DNA of 64,000 nucleotides from Gekko japonicus (Eukaryota), in contig NW_015165238.1 of the NCBI RefSeq assembly GCF_001447785.1, positions 219,633-283,632 on the forward strand. The letters are read 5' to 3'. The notes beneath the pieces were generated by a model. That model ran no database searches, was not told the origin of the DNA, and was given only the letters and a program-made list of their open reading frames with translations. Both the position numbers and the translations under genes were made by a program. This document shows, piece by piece, positions 7,193 to 55,359 of the stretch. The stretch's first letter is position 1; every line of letters begins with the position of its first letter.

Positions 7193-8503
7193 GTCACATG
7201 ATGGTTAACATTAAAAGCTTTATGTGAGTGTTTGTGTGTGTACTTATTATTATTCTAATGACATAGCATAGGACTTATTTAAAGACTGACTGAATGAATG
7301 AATTTTATTGTTACAGCGCATAGCCAGCAATATAAAACCTTAAAAAAATAAATTACAATAACCGGATGATAAAACTGTATGATTCTCAGAAACTATTTCA
7401 GGGAGAATATATAAGGCAGGATTCATGACGACATACTCGGTCAAAAACATATTCCATCATATGAAGTGTCTTTTATTCAACGGATGATGACCTCCAAGAG
7501 AAAGCCTCATTTGTACAAAAAGATGTGATTGTGACAATATAAGCTGCTTGTAGCTATGACTGTGTGAATCTGGCCAACTTTCCAATTCAAGCCCAAATCC
7601 ACAAATGGGGGCGGTAATGAGGAGGGCGAATTGGCTGATGTTGAATGGAAAGTTGGATGCATCCAGCTCAAGAAGCTGTTGGTTTGAACAATAGATTAAA
7701 ATTTTCTCATTTCTCTTTCTTAATGCAGGCCACTAATCTCCATGAAATCCTGCTTCTGGAGGATAAGGCACCCTAAGGAATGGCATGAGGGGTATGTGCA
7801 AGAGGAGGGTGGTATTGGCGGCAATTGCCAAGATAGTTGGGATCAAACCCAGTGTTTGTATTCTTACATGTCATTTAGCTTGTATCTTAAAATGTAAGGA
7901 ATTATTCAGATATTTTCTATTCAGAACAATTCCATTACCAATTGGGGTGAGTAACATGTGCTGCTGGTTCCAGAACATGGGAAACAGCTGTTTTGTAAAA
8001 ACTAGATTGTAGGCCTGCTGATCAGAGGGTTTCCTGGATTTAAATTCTACTCCACTAGGAAACCATTACAGACTAGGAATTTGCTTGGACAAAATCAGTT
8101 GCCCACTGTCAGCCTGCCCTACCTCACAGGATTGTTGTTAAGACAAAGTGGAGGATAAGAAAATGATGTAAGGCATTTTCAGGCCCCATGGGAGTAAAAG
8201 GCACAGTTTAAATGAAGTAAAATAAATAAATGGTGTATGCTAGCCATCTTATGGCCCAAAACTAACAATGGATTGCATAGTAACAATGAGATGGTCTACT
8301 ACATGAGGTAATAACTGCACAATTAACTTTGTAAGAGAAAAAAGTCTTTTGGTGTGGTTTCCATATGCCCAAATAAAACACATGATAATATTTTATAAAT
8401 CTCAGCATTGATGGTAGGAGAGAGGGTATAATAATTTCTAGGATTAGGGTCTTTTACTTTAATACCTTATCATTTTTTAATTTCATCTTCAGTTATTCAA
8501 ACA

Positions 8504-9451
8504 ATGGAGCATATGGAGACAGATAATAAAACAACAGTAAGTACATTTATTCTTCTGGGATTTGGAAATACCCCTGAACTTCAGATTCCTCTCTTCCTGG
8601 TTTTCCTAATAATCTACAGTCTGACCATGACTGGAAACATCATCATCATTGTGTTAGTAATCACAGATCATCACCTTCACATCCCCATGTATTTCTTCCT
8701 TGGAAACTTGTCCTGTTTGGAGACTTTCTACACATCAACCATTCTCCCCAGGATGTTGGCCAGTTTCCTAACAGGGGACAGAACCATTTCTTTTAGGGGC
8801 TGCTATATCCAGTTTTACTGTTTTGGTATACTTGGGGTTGCTGAGTGCTACCTACTGGCATCAATGTCATATGATAGGTATTTGGCAATATGCAAGCCCC
8901 TCCACTATGCCACCCTCATGAGCAGAAGACTCTGCTTTCTGTTGTCAGCTGTAACTTGGCTTTGTGGGATAGCAGTCATGACTTTACTAATGTCTTTGAT
9001 GTCAGAGCTGATATATTGTGGCCCCCATGAAATTGATCATTTCTTTTGTGACTTTACACCAGTGATTAATCTATCGTGCAGTGACACAACACTGTTGACA
9101 CTGGTGAGCCTCATCGTGTCTTTCATAAATATTGTTCCTTCTTTTCTTCTGACCGTGCTGTCTTACATTTGTATAATTGCTGCCATCATACGAATCCCCT
9201 CTTCAGATGGGAGGAAAAAAGCCTTTTCCACTTGTTCTTCCCACCTCATTGTAGTTTCCATCTTTTATGGTTCACTGATGTTTGTATATGTGCTACCACA
9301 AAAAGAAGCTATGAGAGAAGTGGACAAGATGTTCTCGGTCTTCTACACAGTCTTAACCCCTCTAATTAATCCCCTCATCTATAGTCTAAGAAACGAAGAG
9401 GTTAAAAAAGCTTTAAGGAGAGCTGTCAACAAGTGTGGGTTTTCCAAGTGA
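8504..9451 (+). CDS. Olfactory receptor, intact, 315 aa (class II, OR6/OR11-like)
   Basis: N-glycosylation site NKT; GN, LHIPMYFFLGNLS, MSYDRYLAIC, HFFCD, KAFSTCSSHL, PLINPLIYSLRN; polypyrimidine/AG acceptor at 8491-8492. Confidence 0.97.
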   Translation: MEHMETDNKTTVSTFILLGFGNTPELQIPLFLVFLIIYSLTMTGNIIIIVLVITDHHLHIPMYFFLGNLSCLETFYTSTILPRMLASFLTGDRTISFRGCYIQFYCFGILGVAECYLLASMSYDRYLAICKPLHYATLMSRRLCFLLSAVTWLCGIAVMTLLMSLMSELIYCGPHEIDHFFCDFTPVINLSCSDTTLLTLVSLIVSFINIVPSFLLTVLSYICIIAAIIRIPSSDGRKKAFSTCSSHLIVVSIFYGSLMFVYVLPQKEAMREVDKMFSVFYTVLTPLINPLIYSLRNEEVKKALRRAVNKCGFSK

Positions 9452-11934: not shown

Positions 11935-12035
11935 TCTTAACCCCTCTAATTAATCCCCTCATCTATAGTCTAAGAAACAAAGAGGTAAAAAGAGCTCTAA
12001 TGAGAGCTGTAAACAAGTGTGGGAGTTCCAAGTGA
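11935..12035 (+). pseudogene. OR 3' relic (TM7 and C-tail only)
   Basis: Encodes LTPLINPLIYSLRNKEVKRALMRAVNKCGSSK*, followed by the same 3' flank as the other + strand ORs. Confidence 0.9.
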
Positions 12036-12141
12036 TTTGATGGAGATGGAGAGTAATTAGATCAAACTTGTCTGGAATGAAATCTACAGGGCAAAACAAT
12101 TACTTGTAGGTTCCTGTAATAGTCTCCATTCCATTTACATA

Positions 12142-19155: not shown

Positions 19156-20403
19156 AAATAGATCCACTTAATAATCCCAATTTAACACTTTTATGGAACA
19201 TGATAGGAGGGTTCCTATGATTAAGGTTGTGTTGTTGTTATTGTTGTTTATATGTTTTGTTTTTAGAACCAGCTCTTGTCTACTCATGCAAGATACAAAA
19301 ACAGGTTTATCTTGAAAAGGATTTTATGGTATACTTCGAGGGGAGATTACATTTTAGTAAACTTTCACTTCATCCAAAGTTTGTAAACTAATTTAGAAAA
19401 GAAAAGAAAAAAGATGTATATTCATCCTGCACAGGGCCCTGATATTCTTCATGTGAGGTTGGATCTAGACCATTTTTTGAGGTGTAAAAGAGGAGAAAGG
19501 TCCCCTGTCATAAACCAATTACACTGGAGGCAATGGGACCTGCACAGACAGCATTTTTATGTCATGGGCGCTATCATAAGGAGGGCAATTTCGCTGACAT
19601 TGAATGAAATGTTGGATGGATCCAATTCAATAAGCTGTTTTGGGTTAGATCCAGACTACATTTTTTTACAACAGAAAAGAACTTTCTTGCCTCTTCCTCC
19701 CAATGCAGGCCACTAATATCCATGAAATGCTGCCTAAGGAATAGCATGAGGAGAAGTTTGGATCCAACCCAGTTTTTGTACTCTTATATGTAATTTAGCC
19801 TGTAGCTTCAACGTTAAATGAGTATTCAGTTATTTTCTATTCAGAATACTTCTATGACCAATTGAGGTGATAATGATGCACTGCAGGTTCCAAAACAAAA
19901 GGAACAGCTGTTTTGTGTAAAACAGATGGTAAGCCTGTTGATCAGAGGGTTTCTTAGGCTTGGGTTCCACTCTTTACAGACTAGGCCTTTGCTTGGAGAA
20001 AATCAGTCACCAACTTCCAGCCTGAACTACCTCACAGGATCTACCTAAACTGGAGGATACGAAAATTATGTAAGCCAATTTCAGCCCCCAATGCATCCCA
20101 TGGCAGAAAAAGGCATAGTATAAATGAAGCAAAATAAATAAATGGTGCCTGCTAGCCATCTTATGACCCAACTCTAACAATGACGTTATCATCAAGAAAC
20201 AATGTAATAGTCTATCACTTGATGTAATACATGCACAATTAACTTCAAAACAGGAAATGACTTTTGGGGTGGTTTTCATATGTTCAGATAAAACACATAT
20301 TAGCATTTTATAAATGTCAGTATCAATTTGGGAGAAAGGGTAAAATACTTTCTAGGCTTGGAGACCTCATGATTTTTTAATTTTATTTTCAGTGAGTCAA
20401 GCA

Positions 20404-21351
20404 ATGGAACATATGGAAACAGACAATAAAACAGCAGTAACTACATTCATTCTTCTGGGCTTTGGGAATGCCCCTGAACTTCAGATTCCTCTCTTTTTGG
20501 TTTTCCTAATAATCTACAGTGTGACCATGGCTGGAAACATCATCATCATCGTGTTAGTAATCATGGATCATCACCTTCACACCCCCATGTACTTCTTCCT
20601 TGGAAATTTGTCCTGTTTGGAGACCTTCTACACTTCAACCCTTCTCCCCAGGATGTTGGCCAGTTTCCTAACAGGGGACAGAACCATATCTGTTGGGGGC
20701 TGCTATATCCAGCTTTACTGTTTTGGTATACCTGCCATTGCTGAATGCTACCTACTGGCATCAATGTCATATGATCGGTATTTGGCAATATGCAAGCCCC
20801 TCCAATATGCCACTCTCATGAGCAGAAGGCTCTGCTTTCTATTGTCAGCTGTGTCCTGGCTTTGTGGGATAACGGTTATGACTTTACTAATAGGTTTGAT
20901 GTCACAGCTAAAATACTGTGGCCCCCATGAAATTGATCGCTTCTTTTGTGACTTAGCACCAGTGATTAATCTATCATGCAGTGACACAACTCTGGTGACA
21001 CTGGTGAGCCTCACAGTATCTGTCATAGATAGTGTTCCTTCTTTTCTTCTGACCCTGCTGTCTTATATTAGTATAATTGCTGCCATCGTACGAATCCCGT
21101 CGTCGGATGGGAGAAAAAAGGCCTTTTCCATCTGTTCTTCCCACCTCATTGTAGTTTCCATATTTTATGGGTCATTGATATTTGTATATGTGCTACCACA
21201 AAAAGATGCTCTGGGAGAAGTGGACACGATCTTTTCAATCTTCTACACAGTCTTAACCCCTCTAATTAATCCCCTTATTTATAGTCTAAGAAACAAAGAG
21301 GTAAAAAAAGCTTTAATGAGAGCTATCAATAAGTGTGGGATTTTCAAGTGA
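20404..21351 (+). CDS. Olfactory receptor, intact, 315 aa
   Basis: All OR motifs present, with variants DRFFCD and KAFSICSSH; acceptor AG at 20391-92, so the ATG at 20404 is preferred. Confidence 0.96.
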   Translation: MEHMETDNKTAVTTFILLGFGNAPELQIPLFLVFLIIYSVTMAGNIIIIVLVIMDHHLHTPMYFFLGNLSCLETFYTSTLLPRMLASFLTGDRTISVGGCYIQLYCFGIPAIAECYLLASMSYDRYLAICKPLQYATLMSRRLCFLLSAVSWLCGITVMTLLIGLMSQLKYCGPHEIDRFFCDLAPVINLSCSDTTLVTLVSLTVSVIDSVPSFLLTLLSYISIIAAIVRIPSSDGRKKAFSICSSHLIVVSIFYGSLIFVYVLPQKDALGEVDTIFSIFYTVLTPLINPLIYSLRNKEVKKALMRAINKCGIFK

Positions 21352-25329: not shown

Positions 25330-25990
25330 AGGTTGTTTTGGGATGTGTCTCTCAAAAAAGACCACCCCAGATTCAGGGCCCAGGAGGTTAGTTAAAGGTA
25401 AAGGTTCCCTTGCTCGAAAGACAGTTGAGTCCGACTCTAGGGTTGCGGTGCTCATCTCCGTTTCAAAGCCGAAGAGCCAGCGCTCCCCCAAGACGTTTCC
25501 ATGGCCATGTGGCCGGCATGACTAAACACCAAGGTGCATGGAACGCTGTTACCTTCCCACCGAAGTGGTACCTATTTATCTACTTGCAATTTCTTGCTTT
25601 TGAACTGCTAGGTTAGTTACAGTACCCCAAAATCCCTGTACAGGTTTATCAATCCAGCCAGTATCCTAGGGTGAGGCAAGTATTGACCCAAATCACCTGC
25701 CATGGCATTCCTCAGTTCCCAGTTCATCTTTCAGCTAGACTTGTCCAAACATCAGGATCCACCATGCCACATCATATATGGTGTAGCAATATAGTAGTCC
25801 ACACAATCTGTGTACCAGGCCACCTACTCTTGATGAACTCCAGGTTAGCCTTTGACTGAATCACCAGGGCCTTCCTTTCCAGAAGGCCGAGATAATTTCC
25901 ACACAAATCGATCAAAAACACCTGAGGTGGAGGACCCTGTCTCCTCAAATAACAGTGGGATGAGACTAGGCCAACCTCAAGCCCTGTCAC
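25330..25990 (-). mobile_element. Ngaro/DIRS-type retroelement remnant (SGNH-hydrolase ORF)
   Basis: GPPPQVFLIDLCGNYLGL..KALVIQ / LEFIKSRWPGTQIVWTTIL..LDKSS*KMNWEL..LPHPRILAGLINLYR resemble SGNH block III (GxND) and the run-up to block V; a Sauria SINE interrupts at about the DxxH position. Confidence 0.6.
25395..25614 (-). mobile_element. Sauria SINE, 5'-truncated
   Basis: (AAAGGT)n = reverse of the ACCTTT tail; TSD aggttagtta at 25385-94 and 25610-19, partly microhomology. Confidence 0.85.
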
Positions 25991-26918
25991 CCCAACCGTT
26001 CAACTGTAACCAATGCACTGAGCCTTCCTCTAATATTGCCTTTGCAGGTCACCATTCATGGTGGGAATCTTTATTCAGGCAGTCTGACCATGCCACTGGA
26101 ATCTCTCTATATTATAAAGCTGATTTGAGGTGGTATCTCTCCTATGGGGTGGCAGGATTCGATTCATGCCCAAATCAGTTGGCCGCCTGGACTGCCACTC
26201 ACAAACGAGTCCCTGGCCACTGGTTGGGTTAGCTACATCCCTCCCACAGAGGCAGCAGGCACTGGAACTCAACTCACAAGACAACTTCACCTCAGGCACA
26301 CAGGACAGATGCTCCGGTGACTCTGGCGCTGATGCTGGGGGGTAGTGAGAGCTGCGGCGAGGGAAGGGACGAGCCTGGCCAGCCTGGCCCAGCGGGTGCT
26401 TGAGGGGGAGGGAGAAGGGATGAGGATGGTCACTCTGCCACTGTTGCTGGGGGTCGGGACAACCGTGCTGAGGGAAGGGACGAAGTGGGTTGGCCTTGCC
26501 TGTTGTGGCCTAAAGCAGAGGGAGGTGCAATGTGCCCAGTGAGTTTGGCACTGCTGAGGCCGCTGAGGCTGTGGGGAGCCACACCAGTGGGAAGGGCGAG
26601 GCCGGGCACTTGGCCCACTGGGGCCTCAAGAGGGTGGGCCCAGGGATGGCCGGGAATAAGGTAGGGTGCCCTGGCCCACTGACACCTCGACCATGAGGGG
26701 GCAGGTCAAATCACCTGGTCCGCTGGAGCAGGGGGTAGGCCTGGCACCCTGGCCCGCCACCACCACAAGTGGGTCTGGGAAATGGGCAACTGCTTCCGGC
26801 TTGGCCTGCCAGGGCCTCAGCCATCGGTGGGGTGAGGTGCAGGAAGAAATTAGGGGACCGCAGCCTCACTAGGTCCCATTGTCTTCCTTACCATAACCAG
26901 CCTTCTCCCTAGTCCTTA

Positions 26919-27261
26919 GGTAAAGGTTCCCTTGCTCGAAAGCCAGTCGAATCCTACTCTAGGGTTGCGGTGCTCATCTCCGTTTCAAAGACGAAGAGCC
27001 AGTGCTGTCAGAAGACGTTTCCGTAGTCATGTGGCCAGCATGACTAAACATCAAGGCGCACGGAACACTGTTACCTTCTCAGCGGAGTGGTACCTATTTA
27101 TCTACTCGCAATTTCTTGCTTTCGAACTGCTAGGTTGGCAGGAGCTGGAACTAGAGATGGGAGCTCACTCCATCATGCGGCACCTGGGTCTCGAACTGCT
27201 AAACTACTGACCTTCCACAGCCTGCAGTTCAGCGTCTTAACACTTGAGCCACCGCAGCTCC
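26919..27261 (-). mobile_element. Sauria SINE, full length
   Basis: Highly similar to 33404-33753 over its whole length. Confidence 0.9.
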
Positions 27262-29550: not shown

Positions 29551-32513
29551 TGTAATGTTCTGGATGTTGGTTCATAATTCTAGATGTTAAGAAGCATTGA
29601 GGCAGAAGGGGACTGTCCCCATAGGGTAAAATGATCCCTACCAGTTGTGTGTGGGGGGTGGCAGGCTCCCATCATTGAAGGGAAGACAAATTGGGAAGCA
29701 GCAGCATGACTTCAGAGAGGGGGGATTTAAATTTTAAGCCCGCTCAGTTTTTGGAGTCACTGGGCAGAGGCGGCATGCTCCGTTCAGTAGGCTGGCCCTA
29801 CTGTCAGGCAGAAACTTCTCTTGGGGATCTCAGGCACTTTTGCATGTCAGAGGGGCTGGTGCACTAGCCCCTCTGTCAGGCAGAAGCCCTGGATTCCCTT
29901 TCTCCCACCCCCTTCCCTTTGCCCCACTTGGAGGTGAGATGAAGGGAAGGGAAAGGGGGAAAGGAATGGATCTCAGGCACTTCTGCCTGTCATAAGGGCT
30001 GTCACATTGGCCCCTCTGTCATGCAGAAGTGCCGGATTCCCTCCCCCCTTTTCCCTTCACCCCGCTTGGAGGTGAGGTGAAGGGAAGGGAGAGTGAGAAA
30101 GGAATAGATCTCAGGCACTTCTGCTTGTCAGAGGGGAAGGTGTGCTGGCACCTCTGTCAGGTAGAAGCACCTAAGATCCATTCACTCTCCCCCTTCTGTA
30201 TCCCTGAATGTGCGGGTATGCCCTAATCAGCCAGATGAATCAGATAAAAGAATCTGATTTTGTAATTAGCCTTCCTGTGTAATGCCATATAGGCATTATT
30301 CAGGTTCCTAATTGGCTTGGCTGAGTGGAATGCACATCCCTAATGCACTTTCAAGAGTCAAAACTCACTTCAGCATAAACATACTGCTATATTTCCTTCG
30401 TTTTTGATCATATATTAGTGTTTGTGTTGTTATATATTGCCTCTGTATACTCAGGTTTCTTATTGGAAAAGGATGAAAAAGAAGGAAGGACATATCATTG
30501 GGGAATTATGACTCTCTCTGTGATCATGGCACTTCACTCTCAAGAGCTCACTTGAGCAGGTCTCTGGAGAGGCAGCATATAAACATTTGAAACAAGGGTT
30601 CTTCCAAATAAAAGACTGGAGTATTTTGAAGCCTTAATTAGTATTACATCGTTTTTAGAAGGGGGATTTGCTAATTGTTCTGAAATTCCTTCTGTAAGGT
30701 ATCAAGAGGTTGCTCTCTGTAGACATTCTGTTGCTTCCTTATATAAAACCTCTTTTGTGTACTGTACTGGTGAAGTGGCAACATATGATGGTTTCCTTCA
30801 GGAAATGTTAGTCATTTCTCATGATAGCTAGACAAATGTGCAACAGCTGTATGTACCTACCTCTCAACCATTCTTCGTTGATGCCAGTTGATAGTTAATG
30901 GTTAAAGGTTTTTTTATATATATGCATATATAATTATTATTCTAGTGATGTAGCGTAGGACTTAAAGATTCTTAGAAACTACTTCCGGGAAAATATATAA
31001 GGCTGGATTCAATGATGGCCATAAACTGTCAAAAACATTTCTTCAAATGAAGTGTCCTTCATTTGGTAAATGGGGGCTTCCAGAAAAAACGTCATTTGTA
31101 CAAAAGAGGTGGTTGTGACAATTTAAGGTGCCTGTAGTCAAGATCTATGTCTGTGTGAATATGGTTGACTTTCCAATTCAAGTCCACAGAAATAGATTCT
31201 ACTTAAGAATGCTAATTTAACACTGTTATCAAACCTCAGACATCAATTCAGTATGCAAAAGGAGGGATTCTGTTATACTGGTTGTGTTGTTGTTTGGAGT
31301 TTTTTTATTTGTTTGTTTTATTACCAGCTCTTGTTTAGCACATGCTCATGCAGGATAGAAAAACAGCTTTGTTTTGAAGACAACTGTACTGCATACTTGA
31401 AGGGGGGATTACATTTTAGTGATCTTTCACACCATCCCAAGTTTGTAAACTAACTCAGAAAAAAACAACTCGGATGTATAATTCATCCTGTAAACAGAGC
31501 CTTATATTTTGCATGTGCGGTTAGTTCCAACCATCGTTTACTGGTGGAGATGAAATGAAAAGTCTCTTTTCATCAACCAATAACTCAGGAGACACTGGGA
31601 CATGCATAAACAGCATTTGTGTGTTATGGGGGCTGTAATAAGGAGGGCAAGTTGGCAGAAATTGAATGAAAAGTTGAGTGCATCCAACTCAAGAAGATAG
31701 GTTGGATCTAGACTTCATTCTTGAACAAAAAAATGGAATGTTCTTGTTTACCCCTCCCAATGTAGGTCACTAATCTCCATGAAATGCTGTTCCTGGAGGA
31801 TAACCCTAAAGAATGGCATGAGAGGTCTGTGCATTGAAAAGGTGAAATTGGTGACAATTGCCCGTGTAGTCTGGATCCAACCCAGTGTTTGTGCTCTTAC
31901 ATGTCATTTAGCTTGTAGCTTCATATGAAAATGGGTATTCAGTTAATTTCTATTCAGAATACCCCCGTGACGAGTTGAGGTGAATATCATGCACTGCTGC
32001 TTCTAGAACACAGAGAACACCTGTTTTGCGTAAAACAGATGATAGGGCTGCAGTTAAAAGGGTTTCTTAGGCTTAGATTCCACTCCTCTAGTAAACCGTT
32101 ATAGACTATGACTTTGCTTGGAGAAAAATAAGATACCCACTGTCAGCCTGATCTGCCACAGAACTCTGTTCTTAGAAGAAAAGGTACAGTACAAATGAAG
32201 CAAAATAAATAAATAAACATTGCTTCCTAGGCATCTAATGGCACAACAGTAACAAAGGATTGTAATATCCTTTTTTACTGTTGTCACCAAGTAACAATAA
32301 GATGGTCTACTACATGAGGTAATATCTGCACAATTACTTTCATAACAGAAAAGGTGTTGGCGTGGTTTCCACATGTCCAAATAAAACACACGAGAACAGT
32401 TTATAAATCAGAGCATTAATTGTGGGAGACAGGGTATAATAATTTCAAGGCTTTGGAGTCTTTCACTTGGAGACATTCTGATTTTTTAAATTTCATTTTC
32501 AGTGATTCAAACT

Positions 32514-33824
32514 ATGGAGTATATGGAGAGAGACAATAAAACAGCAGTAACTACATTCATTCTTCTGGGATTTGGGAATGCCCCTGAACTTCAGATTCCT
32601 CTCTTCTTGGTTTTCTTAATAATCTACAGTGTGACCATGGCTGGAAACATCATCATTATTGTGTTAGTAATCACGGATCATCATCTTCACATCCCCATGT
32701 ACTTCTTCCTTGGAAACTTGTCCTGTTTGGAGACTTTCTACACTTCAGCTCTTCTCCCCAGGATGTTGGCCAGTTTCCTGACAGGAAACAAAACCATTTC
32801 TCTTTGGGGTTGCTTTATCCAGCTTTACTGTTTTGGTACAGTTGTGATTGCTGAATGCTACCTACTGGCATCAATGTCATATGACCGATATTTGGCAATA
32901 TGCAAGCCCCTCCAATATGCCACTCTCATGAGCAGAAGACTCTGCTTTCTGTTGTCAGCTGTATCTTGGCTTTGTGGGATAATGGTTATGACTTTAGTAA
33001 TAGGTTTGATGTCACAGCTGAAATACTGTGGCCCCCCAGAAATTGATCATTTTTTGTGTGACTCGGCACCAGTGATTACTCTATCATGCAGTGACACAAC
33101 TCTGGTGACACTGGTGAACCTCACAATATCTTTCATAGATACTGTTCCTTCTTTTCTTCTGACCCTGCTGTCTTACGTTTGTATCATTGCTGCCATCATA
33201 CGAATCCCCACTTCAGATGGGAGGGAAAAGGCCTTTTCCACCTGTTCTTCCCACCTCATTGTAGTTTCCATATTTTATGGCTCACTGATATTTGTGTATG
33301 CCCTACCAAAAAAAGAAGCTCTGAGAGAAGTGGACAAGATCTTCTCAGTCTTCTACACAGTCTTAACTCCCCTAATTAATCCCCTCATCTATAGTCTAAG
33401 AAAGGTAAAGGTAAAGGTTCCCTTGCTCGAAAGCCAGTCGAATCCGACTCTAGGGTTGCGGTGCTCATCTCCGTTTCAAAGCCGAAGAGCCAGCGCTGTC
33501 CGAAGACGTTTCCGTGGTCATGTGGCCGGCATGACTAAACACCAAGGTGCACGGAACGCTGTTACCTTCCCACCGAAGTGGTCCCTATTTATCTACTTGC
33601 AATTTCTTGCTTTCGAACTGCTAGGTTGGCAGGAGCTGGAACTAGAGACAGGAGCTCACCCTGTCTTGCGGCACCCGGGTCTTGAACCGCCGAACTACTG
33701 ACCTTCCACAGCCTGCAGTTCAGCGTCTTAACCACTTGAGCCACCGCAGCTCCATAGTCTAAGAAACAAAGAGGTAAAAAAAGCTTTAATGAGAGCTGTC
33801 AACAAGTGTGGGATTTCCAAGTGA
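32514..33824 (+). pseudogene. Olfactory receptor disrupted by a Sauria SINE after TM7 (read-through ORF 32514-33701, 395 aa; native tail at 33764-33824)
   Basis: Intact OR through NPLIYSLR, then antisense SINE sequence; the native NKEVKKALMRAVNKCGISK* follows the second TSD copy. Confidence 0.9.
33404..33753 (-). mobile_element. Sauria SINE, full length, young
   Basis: Perfect 13-bp TSD ATAGTCTAAGAAA (33391-33403, 33754-33766); (ACCTTT)n tail on the minus strand; CpGs retained. Confidence 0.95.
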
Positions 33825-34345
33825 TTTGTTGGAGATGGAGAGTGATCAGATCAAACTCATCTGGAATAAAATCTACAGGGTGGAGCAATTTATTGTCATT
33901 TTCTGTAATAGTTTCCATTCTGTTTATATACTTGAGTTTTCAGCTTTAGTAGTGGAAGTATAATGGAATGGAGTAACACGAAAAATTCCAGTTTCTTCCC
34001 ACATCTTCTTTATGCTCCTTTTGATTCATCCATGAATCAACTGTCTACATAATGTTGTAGTTCATATGTTGTAATTCAACTACTTTTGTTTCAGAACAAT
34101 ATTTGATACTTAGCAGATAAGTATTTATGAGTGGTGCAAAAACATCAAACACATGACCAATGAAGAAGATTCCTAAAATGTTAGTTAAGATTCCAAATGT
34201 TACTATCTAGTCAAAAAGAATGACAGCCGATGCTTGATTTTATTGTAGACATTGTGCTTTTGTGATTAGAAAACAAGTTTTCAAATCTGTAAATACCATA
34301 AACAATGGCAGTCAACAGGTAACTTTTTCTACCTGTGCCATTAAT

Positions 34346-35125
34346 ACGATTAAACTGCCCACGGCCGTTCCGGCTGTTGGGCTGGGAAAGCGCTTTTGCC
34401 TCCCAGCCGGTGCCCAAAAGTGCCACATATGGGACTTGGGAGGGGACGGGGCACTGAAGGCTTAAAAGCCCTGCCCTGCCTCTCTTCTCCAGCAGTCCCG
34501 CGCAGTTCGTCGGCCCACCCTCCCGCCCTGTTAGTAGTGCAGGCGTTTGCTGGTCACCAGTTTTTTGGGCCGGGTAGGAATTTTTCACCCCTTCCTGTTT
34601 GGCACTTGGAGGGGGTTAGGCCTACCCTGCACTGTGGCAGTGATGCAGGTGTTTATGGGGGTGAGCTGTGTTAGCCAGGTTGGTCACTTTCGTTTAGGCA
34701 GGAGGCTATGCGGTATACAGATTGTGGTCCGGTGAGCACCAGCTGACACCCATCATTTGGGGTTTAAGGGGTCCTCTGAGTACAGTCTTTGTGCCTTGTG
34801 GCATGGGGTGAGGAAAACGGACTGCCTTCGGGACGGCCCTGTTTAGGTCCTCTCTTTGAACCTTGCGGCTTGGGGGATGGGGCTACAGGGTTGTCCTGCA
34901 ATGGCTAGCCGGCCGGGTGAGAGCCCCTGCAGTGGGCTCCCACCCGGGGCAGGGTGGCTCGCTCTATTGACAAGGTAAGGGAGGGGTCCTTGACCTCTGG
35001 CCTTGACCATAACGCAATCTGTTTTGCCCTTGCCTTTGGTTCCAGTTAAAGATGTCAGTTAATAAAGTGGCCCTATAGTTAAACCCAACACTTGTGTCTG
35101 CCTCATTATTTCTGGCTTGGGGGGC
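34346..35125 (+). mobile_element. GC-rich insertion without TSD, probably DIRS/Ngaro-derived
   Basis: Starts near aaactgcccac; ends gtcagttaataaagtggcc...ggggc|aaata; absent from the paralog at ~21885. Confidence 0.55.
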
Positions 35126-39179: not shown

Positions 39180-39827
39180 TTGCCCACAAACTCTGGATCC
39201 TACCCAGTTTCTGTACTCTTACATGTCATTTAGCTCGTAGCTCCAGCTATTTTCTATTCAGAATACCCACATGATGAGTTGAGGTGAGTTTCATGCACAG
39301 CTGGTTCTAGAACAAGGGGAACAGCTGCAGATCAGAGGGATTCCTAGTCTTAGATTCCACTCCTCTAGTAAACCCTTATAGACTAGGACTTTGCTTGAAG
39401 AAAAATCAGACACCCACTATCAGCCTGACCTACCTCTCAGGTATGGTTGTTAGGATAAAATGGAAGATAAGAAAACAATATAAGTCTTTTCCTGTACCCA
39501 CTGGGGGGAACGGTGCAGTACAAATGAAGTAAAATAAATAAATAAACAATGCCTGCTAGCCATCTTATGGCCCAGCACTAACAATGGATTGCAATATCCT
39601 TTTATAATGTTGTAAACAAGTAAAAATGAGATGGTGTATGACATGAGGTAATGTATGCATAATTAACTTCATAACAGAAAAAATATTTTGGGGTGGTTTC
39701 CCCATGTACAAGTAAAACGCATGAGGGCATTTTTATAAATCTCAGCATTAATTGTGTGAGACAGGGAATAATAATTTCCCTTGGAGACCTTGTGAAGTTT
39801 TAAATTTCATTTTCAGTGATTCAAACT

Positions 39828-40775
39828 ATGACACAAATGGAGACAGATAATAAAACAGCAGTAACTACATTCAATCTTCTGGGATTTGGGAATGCCCCTG
39901 AACTTCAGATTCCTCTCTTCCTCCTTTTCCTAATAATCTACAGTGTGACCATGGCTGGAAACATCATCATCATTGTGTTAGTAATCACGGATCATCACCT
40001 TCACACCCCTATGTACTTCTTCCTTGGAAACTTGTCCTGTTTGGAGACCTTCTACACTTCTACTCTTCTCCCCAGGATGTTGGCCAGTTTCCTGACAGGA
40101 AACAAAACCATTTCTCTTTGGGGTTGCTTTATCCAGCTTTACTGTTTTGGTATGCTTGTGGTTGCTGAGTGCTACCTACTGGCATCAATGTCATATGATC
40201 GGTATTTGGCAATATGTAGGCCCCTCCAATATGCCACTCTCATGAGCAGAAGACTCTGCTTTCTGTTGTCAGCTCTATCTTGGCTTTGTGGGATAACGGT
40301 TATGACTTTAGTAATGAGTTTGATGTCACAGCTGAAATACTGTGGCCCCAATGAAATTGATCATTTCTTCTGTGAATTGACACCAGTGATTAATCTATCA
40401 TGCAGTGACACAACTCTGGTGACACTGGTGGGCCTCACAGTATCATTCATAGATACTGTCCCTTCTTTTCTTCTGACCCTGCTGTCTTACGTTTGTATCA
40501 TTGCTGCCATCATACGAATCCCCACTTCAGATGGGAGGGAAAAGGCCTTTTCCACCTGTTCTTCCCACCTCATTGTAGTTTCCATATTTTATGGCTCACT
40601 GATATTTGTGTATGCCCTACCAAAAAAAGAAGCTCTGAGAGAAGTGGACAAGATCTTCTCAGTCTTCTACACAGTCTTAACTCCGCTAATTAATCCCCTT
40701 ATTTATAGTCTAAGAAACCAAGAGGTAAAAAAAGCTTTAAAAAGAGCCATACATAAGTGTGGGATTTTGAAGTGA
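39828..40775 (+). CDS. Olfactory receptor, intact, 315 aa
   Basis: All OR motifs present; acceptor AG at 39815-16. Confidence 0.96.
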   Translation: MTQMETDNKTAVTTFNLLGFGNAPELQIPLFLLFLIIYSVTMAGNIIIIVLVITDHHLHTPMYFFLGNLSCLETFYTSTLLPRMLASFLTGNKTISLWGCFIQLYCFGMLVVAECYLLASMSYDRYLAICRPLQYATLMSRRLCFLLSALSWLCGITVMTLVMSLMSQLKYCGPNEIDHFFCELTPVINLSCSDTTLVTLVGLTVSFIDTVPSFLLTLLSYVCIIAAIIRIPTSDGREKAFSTCSSHLIVVSIFYGSLIFVYALPKKEALREVDKIFSVFYTVLTPLINPLIYSLRNQEVKKALKRAIHKCGILK

Positions 40776-46567: not shown

Positions 46568-46710
46568 NNNNNNNNNNNNNNNNNNNNNNNNNNNNNNNNN
46601 NNNNNNNNNNNNNNNNNNNNNNNNNNNNNNNNNNNNNNNNNNNNNNNNNNNNNNNNNNNNNNNNNNNNNNNNNNNNNNNNNNNNNNNNNNNNNNNNNNNN
46701 NNNNNNNNNN
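46568..46710. other. Assembly gap (143 N); a second 17-N gap is at 55310-55326
   Basis: Runs of n in the sequence. Confidence 0.99.
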
Positions 46711-51957: not shown

Positions 51958-52302
51958 GGGGCCGCGGTGGCTCAGAGGTTGAGACACTGAGTTGCAGACT
52001 GGAAGGTCTGTAGTTCGGCAGTTTGAGACCCTAGTGCCACATGTCAGAGTGAGCTCCTGTCTCTGGCCCCAGCTCCTGCAAACCTAGCAGTTTGAAAGCA
52101 AGAAATTGCAAGTAAATAGGTACCGCTATGGTGGGAAGGTAACAGCATTCCATGCGCCTTGGCATTTAGTCATGCCCCCCACATGACCATGGAGAAGCCT
52201 TTGGACAGCACTGGCTCTTTGGCTTGGAAACGGAGATGAGTGCTGCCCCCTAGAGTTGGATTCAACTAGCTTTTGAGCAAGGGAAACCTTTACCTTTACC
52301 TT
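51958..52302 (+). mobile_element. Sauria SINE (older copy)
   Basis: ggggccgcggtggctcag head and acctttacctttacctt tail. Confidence 0.88.
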
Positions 52303-53750: not shown

Positions 53751-55359
53751 TTATTGAGGCCCCTGCCACACATAACTTTTGTCCACAAAGGGTCCACAGT
53801 CACCACCACATCCTTCCTCACTTCATTATGGTGGGAAACCTGCTTGGATCCTACCCAGAATGTCCAAATCAAAAGTCATTGCAGTTCCAGTCCCTAAAGA
53901 AGGGGAGAGGGCAGCGAATGCGAGGACCCCTTTATAACTACCCACTAATAAAACCACACAGAGAGAGTATTTTTGTAATAGAATGTGGAATAAATTGGCC
54001 ACATCCTTTATTGGTTACAGCTGTAAGAAACCTTGGAACAGCATGGGTCCACTGGATCCTGTCATTGATTGACCCACCTGCCAGTTGATGTACCCTGTCC
54101 CACCTAGCCCACTTGCTGAGGTGGGGAGAAGCATGGAATGGCAGGTTGCTGGATACCACAAGGACAATTGCAGCTAAGCAGTCTCCCCCGCCATCTGAGT
54201 GTGAGGGTAACCTGTTAGCAACCCCCAAGCTGGGCATGCCCCCTTGGCAGCCCCTGAGCTGGGCATGCCCCTGAAAGCCCTCACTCCAAGATCCCTTAAG
54301 GGGATCCCCACATGCAGGGAAAAAGGCATAAAGGTTGGTTTTCCTAAAATGGATCTGACCCCATGTTGATACTGCCATAAGTTGTGACAAAGAATAAAGC
54401 AGAAATCATTGTGAACAAGAATGCTTCCATGCTTCCAATAATGTAACCTCCTCAGTGGAGACACCTACAAACCCCAGAATTCTTCTTCCCTTCATGAACA
54501 AAACATAGGGAGGGATGGGTTGGCAAATGATCCCGCGTGGCCAACTGAGGAGGCTGAGTGGTGTGGCATGCTTTATTGCCCACAGTGGTCCATCCCCTCC
54601 CCCCTCCCCTGTGTCTTCTTCAGGCCCCATCATAGACCCACCACGAAAGGGGAGGGCCAGGTTTTCCCACCGCTGCTGCCACCTGGCCTCCAAGCTGCCC
54701 ATGCAGCCTGCCCTGCCTTGAAGGAAGTGGCCACCATGGTCATTCATTGCCCTACTGCCTCTCCCCATCCTGTAAGCCCACAAACAGGGCCCACAGTGAG
54801 TCAAGGTCCCCTTCCAATTTTGTGAATATGTAGTGTATTTCATGAACAAGCTTAGCGAACAGCCTGTAGGCTATTCGAGACCCACCACAGCTGGAGTGAG
54901 CACCTGGCCCTAGTCCCAGCTCCCGCCCACCCAGCGGTTCGAAAGCCTTAACAACTTGCGAGTAGATGAATGGGTACCTGCCTTAGAAGGCAGGGAGCAC
55001 CCTCCTCCATTGGGAGGTGGGGTGGGACCCCAGCAGCGGTGATTCGGCGAGCGATGGTGGTGGCGGAGCGGTGTGTGGTGGCGGCGGCAGGCGAGGTGGT
55101 GAGTGGAGAGTAGAGAAAAGATGTGGCATCGGGCGGTGGACCGGCGGCGGAGGCGGAGCCGGGAGGCAGGGGGGCCCGGCGGTGCGGGCGCAGCGGAGCC
55201 TGGGGCGGAGCTGGAGCCACGCTGCGGTCAGCGCGACGAATGGCCCGTCAACTCCAGAAGACCACCGAGAAGTCTGAAGAAAGAGTGGATGGAGAGGCCG
55301 AGCTGAAGCNNNNNNNNNNNNNNNNNGTGGGAGGGGTTCGAGCGGGATATAAGCTGAAT

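What the first reader, a model, noticed from the sequence alone, without database searches (positions are those of the whole stretch)
33391..33824. SINE insertion in an OR may create a new in-frame intron (candidate SINE intronization/splice rescue)
Seen: the antisense Sauria tail joined to the TSD creates AAG|GTAAAG donor-like sites at 33405 and 33411, both in phase 0. The antisense SINE head ends ...tcttaac cacttgagccaccgCAG|ctc cat agt cta aga aac, with a branch-point-like CTTAAC (~33727-32) about 18 nt before CAG (33747-49). Splicing 33405-33749 would give ...YSLR-KLHSLR-NKEVKKALMRAVNKCGISK*, restoring helix 8 and the native stop with only 6 extra residues. Inference: an antisense Sauria SINE carries both splice ends, so it could act as a ready-made intron and keep a normally intronless OR coding region functional. 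Caveat: the polypyrimidine tract is weak.
Basis: partly seen in the sequence, partly recalled or inferred. Interest (0 to 1): 0.8.

Follow-up and report, generated by a model that had tools for sequence, protein, structure and literature searches.

The report
SINE-interrupted gecko olfactory receptor gene
A young mobile element (Sauria SINE) has landed inside a gecko smell-receptor gene; it does carry intron-like ends that would splice out in frame, but nothing shows they are used, so this is most likely a freshly broken receptor gene.

Summary
An otherwise intact olfactory receptor (OR) coding region (ATG 32514) is interrupted after ...PLIYSLRK by a 350-bp antisense Sauria SINE (33404-33753). 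The SINE has a perfect 13-bp target-site duplication. Its (ACCTTT)n tail reads AAG|GTAAAG twice on the gene strand, with GT at 33405 and 33411. Its head ends in CAG (33747-49). Splicing between these sites would remove 345 or 339 nt in frame.

The functional claim has no support, and the predictions lean against it:
- The donors are decent. The acceptor is poor, ranking 50th of 117 AGs on a rough matrix, far below the acceptors that precede each OR start codon.
- Better out-of-frame AGs lie inside the SINE.
- The frame is kept only because the duplication happens to be 13 bp, a 1-in-3 chance.
- Three RNA runs gave zero reads on the OR flanks and no junction. Their tissue is unknown, so this test is uninformative.
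- No public protein model exists for this gene.
- One DNA-like contig may represent a SINE-free allele.

Most likely this is a recent, possibly still polymorphic, insertional knockout. The idea has published precedents: Alu intronization, Introners and split OR genes. Other first-reader notes in this genome link SINEs to splice sites; none concerns this case.

The parts
32482..32502 (+). Inferred natural 3' splice site of the 5'-UTR intron (T-rich tract + CAG), 11 nt before the ATG
   Evidence: Rough matrix score +5.9. The same site is conserved before the three paralog ATGs, scoring +3.6 to +8.8. Inferred from sequence, with no RNA evidence.
32514..33403 (+). OR coding region, 5' piece (N-terminus through TM7, ...NPLIYSLR + AA of the next codon)
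   Evidence: Open frame. Pfam 7tm_4 E=3e-49 covering profile positions 1-265 of 280. 90-95% DNA identity to three intact tandem paralogs.
33391..33403 (.). Target-site duplication, copy 1 (ATAGTCTAAGAAA)
   Evidence: Identical to 33754-33766. Present once in the paralogs.
33404..33753 (-). Sauria-type SINE, full length 350 bp, antisense to the OR
   Evidence: Other copies lie at 26918-27261 (92%), 25393-25614 (95%, partial) and 51958-52300 (83%). Ends in an (ACCTTT)n tail; A-box-like motif at position 11 and B box at position 66 of the sense strand. Thousands of RNA/DNA reads from other copies map to it.
33402..33416 (+). Two tandem donor-like sites AAG|GTAAAG (GT at 33405 and 33411), phase 0, formed by the duplication end plus the antisense SINE tail
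   Evidence: Sequence. Rank 2-3 of 115 GTs in 32400-34400 on a rough matrix. The same 9-mer is listed as the natural donor of BRCA1 exon 19 (PMC12805630).
33699..33701 (+). Stop codon of the unspliced read-through frame (395-aa product with a 98-aa SINE-encoded tail)
   Evidence: ORF list. The tail has no Pfam match.
33727..33749 (+). Branch-point-like CTTAAC and acceptor-like CAG in the antisense SINE head; weak pyrimidine tract
   Evidence: Sequence. Rough acceptor score -4.66, rank 50 of 117 AGs. In the minimum-free-energy fold this stretch is paired with 33452-33470 (z = -0.96, not significant).
33754..33766 (.). Target-site duplication, copy 2
33767..33824 (+). OR coding region, 3' piece (helix 8 and C-terminus, native stop at 33822-24)
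   Evidence: Frame and stop match the paralogs.
33776..33782 (.). A7 run (the Lys-Lys codons of helix 8), which is a T7 run on the SINE strand 10-16 nt upstream of the duplication's first base: the likely endonuclease recognition stretch
   Evidence: Matches the published Tn-~10 nt-T insertion signature of Sauria SINEs (PMC13295347). Its role as the recognition stretch is inference.
33865..33870 (+). AATAAA, probable polyadenylation signal 41 nt after the stop
   Evidence: Conserved in all four full-length paralogs. Function is inferred.

Best explanation
A young Sauria SINE retrotransposed in antisense orientation into the coding exon of one member of a tandem olfactory receptor cluster, in a genome that is Gekko japonicus or very close to it. 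It inserted exactly at the TM7/helix 8 junction.

The site and orientation fit the target preference of its Bov-B LINE partner. The conserved Lys-Lys codon run of helix 8 gives a T7 stretch on the opposite strand, 10 nt upstream of a duplication that begins with T.

By default the single coding exon is not spliced. Translation then runs from ...YSLRK into 98 SINE-encoded residues and stops at 33699-33701. That product has all seven helices but lacks helix 8, which is needed for G-protein coupling. The gene is therefore most likely a recently inactivated, possibly still polymorphic, OR allele.

The intron-like ends are general by-products of the SINE's tail repeat and head sequence. In-frame removal is possible on paper but is not the predicted main outcome.

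- **Shown:** the insertion anatomy, family membership, motifs and frame.
- **Inferred:** lack of splicing, loss of function and the targeting mechanism.
For: - **Insertion is real.** Perfect 13-bp duplication and single-copy target in the paralogs. Full-length SINE with three other copies in the window.
- **Sauria insertion signature.** (ACCTTT)n tail, duplication starting with T, and T7 10 nt upstream (PMC13295347).
- **Weak acceptor.** Score -4.66, rank 50 of 117, against +3.6 to +8.8 for the inferred natural OR acceptors. Better out-of-frame AGs lie at 33624 and 33718.
- **Helix 8 is lost.** The Pfam OR profile is cut at position 265 of 280, so helix 8 is missing from the read-through product. 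Helix 8 is needed for Golf-type coupling (PMC5133925).
- **No annotation.** No protein model of this gene appears among 5.8 billion proteins, while neighbouring paralogs from the same 1,997,465-bp contig are annotated.
- **Possible SINE-free allele.** A contig in run X1 fits 33754-33897 at 97.9%, while window paralogs fit at only 87-92%. Its 7 preceding letters do not fit the SINE.
- **Young copy.** It differs from the majority letter of transcribed family copies at about 5 of 350 positions.
Against: - Both flanking coding pieces are intact and the native stop is kept.
- The donors are good and duplicated.
- The GT..AG pair is in frame, with a branch-like motif at a sensible distance and a suitable intron length (339-345 nt).
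- There is precedent for SINE intronization and for an OR coding region interrupted by spliced-out repeats (PMC2394776, PMC7055050).
- No olfactory RNA was available, so unspliced expression is not shown either.
- Lineage-specific substitutions (7 synonymous, 11 non-synonymous) do not differ from the intact paralogs, but that test has no power for a young insertion.
Confidence: 0.65

Rival explanations
1. One reading: the antisense SINE is removed as an in-frame GT-AG intron (33405 or 33411 to 33749). The product would be a 321- or 323-residue receptor with helix 8 and the native stop restored and a 6- or 8-residue scar (KLHSLR or KVKLHSLR). The gene would stay at least partly functional.
For: - Motifs, phase and translations are verified.
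- The donors rank 2-3 of 115, and the 9-mer is a natural human donor.
- The CAG is a family-consensus feature.
- Alu insertions in last exons create alternative introns with both sites inside the Alu.
- Aureococcus Introners leave a 4+8-nt in-frame scar.
- One mammalian OR has its coding region split by repeats and spliced.
Against: - The pyrimidine tract is very weak: score -4.66, against positive scores for the natural acceptors.
- Competing AGs at 33624 and 33718 score better and are out of frame.
- No junction read was found, but there was also no coverage.
- The scar lengthens the TM7-helix 8 linker, whose spacing is conserved in class A receptors (own knowledge: the NPxxY(x)5,6F motif).
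- Intact paralogs have no intron here.
- No gene model exists.
Confidence: 0.15
2. The tail donors are used but pair with a stronger AG inside the SINE (33624 or 33718). The resulting transcripts would be frame-shifted and aberrant, so the locus would be a pseudogene with cryptic splicing.
For: On the rough matrix, 33624 (+2.8) and 33718 (-0.35) outrank 33749 (-4.66) between the donors and the conserved AATAAA.
Against: 33624 is a TAG|G site. There is no RNA evidence. SINE-internal joints seen in the RNA runs have non-GT-AG ends and look like deletion variants of other copies.
Confidence: 0.12
3. The unspliced 395-residue read-through receptor, with a SINE-encoded C-terminal tail, is itself functional or at least sufficient to stabilise receptor choice.
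For: 98 codons are open through the antisense SINE, and all seven helices are intact.
Against: Helix 8 is replaced by unrelated sequence with no family match. Helix 8 is required for signalling in the receptors tested (PMC5133925). An open frame of this length in a GC-rich element is not very improbable; the other two frames have 3 and 6 stops.
Confidence: 0.05

Closest known systems
Alu 'intronization' in last exons (Sela et al. 2007, PMC2394776)
   Same: A SINE inserted into an exon supplies the 5' and/or 3' splice sites, so part of a previously continuous last exon becomes an alternatively retained intron. Antisense orientation is favoured for SINE-derived splice signals.
   Different: The known cases are in primate 3' UTRs, often involve two Alus, and are supported by mRNA/EST and RT-PCR data. 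This case would lie inside a coding region, involve a single squamate tRNA-type SINE, and has no RNA support.
Introners (Gozashti et al. 2022, PMC9860276)
   Same: A transposable element carries both splice sites and leaves a short in-frame scar of element ends plus target duplication. Aureococcus leaves 4+8 nt; this case would leave 5+13 nt.
   Different: Introners are mostly DNA transposons with many copies that function as annotated introns, and that survey found none in vertebrates. This is one retroposon copy with a poor acceptor. Frame preservation depends on the duplication length, and no family-wide intron creation is shown.
Split OR genes (Barnes et al. 2020, PMC7055050)
   Same: OR coding sequences can be split by an intron. 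One mouse/human locus has an intact ORF interrupted by repetitive sequence that is spliced out.
   Different: [quoted passage not shown] This interruption is at the TM7/helix 8 junction, is 345 nt long, is absent from the paralogs and is unsupported by RNA.
Ordinary SINE insertional disruption of an OR (OR pseudogenisation in birth-and-death evolution)
   Same: A recent retroposon insertion with a target-site duplication in one member of a tandem OR cluster, truncating the native C-terminus.
   Different: None of substance. The only unusual point is that the frame stays open and in-frame splice-like ends exist.
Splicing of Ds/dSpm elements out of maize exons (own knowledge, not checked here)
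   Same: An element inserted in an exon is removed from the RNA through element-borne cryptic sites, partly restoring gene function.
   Different: These are plant DNA transposons, shown experimentally. Nothing has been shown for this locus.

Membership tests
Sauria SINE | 3' end terminates in (ACCTTT)n (PMC13295347, Table 4) | tested here: met
   The sense strand ends ...GGGAACCTTTACCTTTACC followed by the TTT of the duplication. The other copies end in ACCTTT or ACCTTTACCTTT.
Sauria SINE | Insertion signature: the duplication starts with T, with a T stretch about 10 nt upstream | tested here: met
   The duplication on the SINE strand is TTTCTTAGACTAT. T7 (33776-33782) lies 10-16 nt upstream (for the published pattern).
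Sauria SINE | tRNA-related 5' head with Pol III A and B boxes | tested here: inconclusive
   The B box GGTTCAAGACC at position 66 is an exact consensus match. The A-box-like TGGCTCAAGTGG at position 11 has one extra base. ARAGORN and Rfam report no tRNA.
Sauria SINE | 3' region shared with the Bov-B LINE | not tested
   No Bov-B reference sequence was available through the tools used.
Vertebrate olfactory receptor (7tm_4) | Match to the OR family profile with intact seven-helix core | tested here: met
   PF13853 E=3e-49, profile positions 1-265 of 280. 80-87% identity to annotated gecko ORs.
Vertebrate olfactory receptor (7tm_4) | Helix 8 contiguous with TM7 | tested here: not met
   Helix 8 codons are displaced 363 nt downstream by the SINE plus duplication.
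Spliceosomal GT-AG intron | GT...AG termini with a consensus-like donor | tested here: met
   AAG|GTAAAG twice, and CAG at 33747-49. Donor rank 2-3 of 115.
Spliceosomal GT-AG intron | Polypyrimidine tract / competitive acceptor | tested here: not met
   Rough score -4.66, rank 50 of 117. Natural OR acceptors score +3.6 to +8.8. The matrix is approximate; MaxEntScan and SpliceAI were not available.
Spliceosomal GT-AG intron | Junction reads in RNA | tested here: inconclusive
   No joint was found, but depth was zero on the OR flanks in the three RNA runs, whose tissue is unknown.
Introner / SINE intronization | Many copies of the same element serving as introns, or mRNA evidence for the spliced form | not testable with these tools
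   No genome-wide annotation or olfactory RNA was available.
Split OR gene (Barnes et al.) | Splice junction conserved in orthologues or closest paralogues | tested here: not met
   All three close paralogs have an uninterrupted site.

The most novel reading that the evidence does not exclude
Antisense Sauria SINEs act as ready-made, introner-like introns in a land vertebrate. The (AAAGGT)n tail gives tandem donors and the head gives the AG, so insertions with duplications of 10, 13 or 16 bp can be tolerated inside coding exons. Under this reading, this OR would be a living example, still producing a working receptor with a 6-residue scar.
Probability: 0.06. Interest if true: 0.7.

Novelty: new member of a known kind. 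Interest (0 to 1): 0.3.

Why it matters
If the SINE were spliced out, it would be the first retroposon-made coding intron caught at birth in an amniote. It would also be an introner-like process in a group where a large survey found none, and a route by which OR genes escape pseudogenisation.

As the evidence stands, the locus is an ordinary young insertional knockout. It leaves two modest, testable by-products:
- Every antisense Sauria SINE places one to four tandem consensus-like donors into host transcripts.
- The conserved Lys-Lys A-run of OR helix 8 looks like a built-in landing site for Bov-B-driven insertions.

Tried and rejected
- **tRNA and RNA-family scans.** ARAGORN and Rfam on 33300-33900 gave nothing, so the tRNA-like head rests only on box motifs.
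- **RNA evidence.** Shares of 0.16-0.31 roughly match the SINE fraction of the query. Laying X21-X23 and X1 gave depth only on the SINE.
- **Published donor score.** A search for a MaxEnt score of the donor 9-mer found only its use as the BRCA1 exon 19 donor.
- **RNA fold.** The fold of 33395-33770 has z = -0.96, so no special structure.
- **Lineage-specific substitutions.** The counts show no relaxation signal, and the test has no power.
- **Protein search.** No model of this gene was found, so its length could not reveal an annotator's choice of splice.
- **Literature.** A search for Sauria SINE plus splice found nothing relevant.
- **Assembly artefact, rejected.** The duplication is perfect, the element is complete, and the N runs are far away (46568-46710 and 55310-55326).
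- **X1 contig as a window paralog, rejected.** The paralogs match at only 87-92%, against 97.9% for the contig.

Full report
**Anatomy**

The window is a tandem cluster of olfactory receptor (OR) genes. Intact paralogs lie at 8504-9451, 20392-21351 and 39816-40775 on the + strand, with two more distant ones on the - strand.

The gene in question starts at ATG 32514 and is open to 33403. Its 297-residue N-terminal piece matches the Pfam OR family (7tm_4, E=3e-49) over profile positions 1-265 of 280. It is 90-95% identical in DNA to its three close paralogs.

After ...NPLIYSLR the frame is interrupted by 350 bp (33404-33753). This insert is flanked by a perfect 13-bp direct repeat, ATAGTCTAAGAAA, at 33391-33403 and 33754-33766. 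The paralogs carry this 13-mer once, directly followed by the helix 8 codons. It is therefore a true target-site duplication.

The native C-terminal codons and stop (33767-33824) are intact.

The best protein matches place the window on a 1,997,465-bp contig shared with annotated Gekko japonicus ORs. No protein model of the interrupted gene itself is on record.

**The insert**

Read on the - strand, the element has these features:
- An A-box-like motif at position 11 and an exact B box at position 66.
- A terminal ...AACCTTTACCTTTACC.
- Three further copies in the window, at 92%, 95% (partial) and 83% identity.
- Thousands of reads from other copies in every run laid on it.

A 2026 survey gives the Sauria SINE hallmarks: an (ACCTTT)n tail, a duplication beginning with T, and a T stretch about one helical turn upstream (PMC13295347). 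All three are met here. On the SINE strand the duplication is TTTCTTAGACTAT, and a T7 run (33776-33782) starts 10 nt upstream.

That T7 is the complement of the A7 run in the Val-Lys-Lys codons of helix 8, which is conserved in the paralogs. I infer that this conserved codon run attracted the Bov-B-type endonuclease. That would explain both the position and the antisense orientation. ARAGORN and Rfam do not call a tRNA, and similarity to Bov-B was not tested.

**The splice-like signals**

- GT at 33405 and 33411, each preceded by AAG and followed by AAAG, both in phase 0.
- CTTAAC at 33727-32.
- CAG at 33747-49, with the exon restarting at 33750 in phase 0.

The donors are simply the antisense of the family tail, so every antisense copy has them. 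The CAG is the antisense of the family head and is the consensus among transcribed copies.

The scar would be 1 nt of tail, 4 nt of head and 13 nt of duplication, or 18 nt. It is in frame only when the duplication length is 10, 13, 16 and so on, which is a 1-in-3 chance.

I scored the sites with a rough position matrix typed from general knowledge of vertebrate splice sites, so the values are approximate:

| Site | Score | Rank or note |
|---|---|---|
| Donors 33405 / 33411 | 3.8 of 8.6 bits | 2nd-3rd of 115 GTs in 32400-34400 |
| Proposed acceptor 33749 | -4.7 | 50th of 117 AGs |
| T-rich CAG sites 11-12 nt before each paralog's ATG (inferred natural 5'-UTR acceptors) | +3.6 to +8.8 | natural comparison |
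| AG at 33624 | +2.8 | out of frame |
| AG at 33718 | -0.35 | out of frame |

The donor 9-mer is the natural donor of BRCA1 exon 19. The two out-of-frame AGs lie between the donors and the conserved AATAAA at 33865-70, and both outrank 33749.

Folding of the putative intron is unremarkable (z = -0.96). In the minimum-energy structure the acceptor region is paired with 33452-33470.

**RNA evidence**

The run search found no run on record as RNA that holds the OR. The shares of words held (0.16-0.31) roughly match the SINE's share of the query.

I laid three raw RNA-seq runs of the same species label, plus the best contig holder, on 32400-34200. In all three RNA runs depth is zero on every bin outside the SINE and high on both strands inside it. 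No 33404^33750 or 33410^33750 joint appears. The few SINE-internal joints lack GT..AG ends.

Only 3-12% of each run was read and the tissue is unknown. ORs are expressed almost only in olfactory neurons (own knowledge). So this result says the locus is silent in those samples and nothing about splicing.

**Consequences for the protein**

Unspliced, the frame reads through 98 SINE-encoded residues to a stop at 33699-33701, giving 395 aa. The tail matches no family and replaces helix 8. In ORs, the N-terminal acidic residue and hydrophobic face of helix 8 are needed for G-protein activation (PMC5133925).

Spliced as proposed, the receptor would have 321 or 323 residues, against 315 in the paralogs, with the extra residues in the TM7-helix 8 linker.

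The exons were examined separately by reference. In one search the two native coding pieces were concatenated in memory only to keep codon positions for counting substitutions. Nothing joined was sent to a search tool.

**Age, polymorphism and selection**

The copy differs from the majority letter of transcribed family copies that are at least 96% similar at about five of 350 positions. Its duplication is perfect, so the insertion is young.

Lineage-specific changes in this OR are 7 synonymous and 11 non-synonymous. The intact paralogs look similar (9/13, 19/21, 20/11), so there is no signal and little power.

A 151-nt contig of run X1 fits 33754-33897 with 3 differences (97.9%). Its first 7 letters do not fit the SINE head. 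Window paralogs are only 87-92% identical over that stretch. The contig is therefore either a SINE-free allele or a closer paralog elsewhere.

**Comparison with what is known**

- **Alu intronization.** SINE-made introns in last exons are described for Alu in primate 3' UTRs.
- **Introners.** Transposons carrying both splice sites and leaving an in-frame scar are the Introners. That survey did not find them in vertebrates.
- **Split OR genes.** OR coding regions split by introns exist in mammals, including one interrupted by repeats. Those introns are conserved and RNA-supported.

Other first-reader notes in this genome describe SINEs sitting at 3' splice sites. That is compatible with the T-stretch target preference. 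I did not test those notes.

**Verdict**

- The best-supported reading is a recent insertional knockout of one OR paralog.
- Rough odds:

| Outcome | Probability |
|---|---|
| Detectable in-frame splicing | about 15% |
| Real functional rescue | about 5% |

Noticed in passing
window 33754-33897 (run X1, record 8): A 151-nt public contig matches the OR's 3' end at 97.9% (differences include 33817 C>T and 33818 C>G) but does not continue into the SINE. Window paralogs match at only 87-92%. It is possibly an empty-site allele, which would make the insertion polymorphic, or an unsampled close paralog.
   Followed up: partly
window 33776-33782 and equivalent sites near 9403, 21303, 40727: The A6-A7 run of the helix 8 Lys-Lys codons is conserved in the OR paralogs. 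On the opposite strand it forms the T stretch that Bov-B/Sauria insertions prefer about 10 nt from the nick. It may be a built-in hot spot for antisense SINE insertion at the TM7/helix 8 junction of these ORs.
   Followed up: partly
window 32482-32502, 8472-8492, 20372-20392, 39796-39816: A T-rich tract ending in CAG lies 11-12 nt before the start codon of each of the four paralogs. It is probably the conserved acceptor of the 5'-UTR intron. There is no RNA evidence.
   Followed up: partly
window 11935-12107: An isolated 3' fragment of an OR (last ~14 codons of TM7, helix 8 and the 3' flank; 88-95% identical to this gene), preceded by an A8 run. It is a truncated OR remnant between two intact paralogs.
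   Followed up: no
window 33452-33470 vs 33735-33753: The SINE has an internal inverted complementarity between a tail-proximal segment and its head (GGGTTGCGGTGCTCA against TGAGCCACCGCAGCTCC). In the predicted fold this pairs the region near the donors with the acceptor region. The overall fold is no better than shuffles.
   Followed up: partly
window 33449-33621 and other SINE-internal joints (table 5): RNA and contig reads show recurrent internal deletions of the SINE (for example a skip of 171 nt, with 17 reads in X23) with non-GT-AG ends. These are probably deletion subfamilies of the element elsewhere in the genome.
   Followed up: no
window 25393-25614: A 222-bp copy of the same SINE, the closest in the window at 95%. 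It retains the tail end and lacks the head (5'-truncated in the sense orientation).
   Followed up: no
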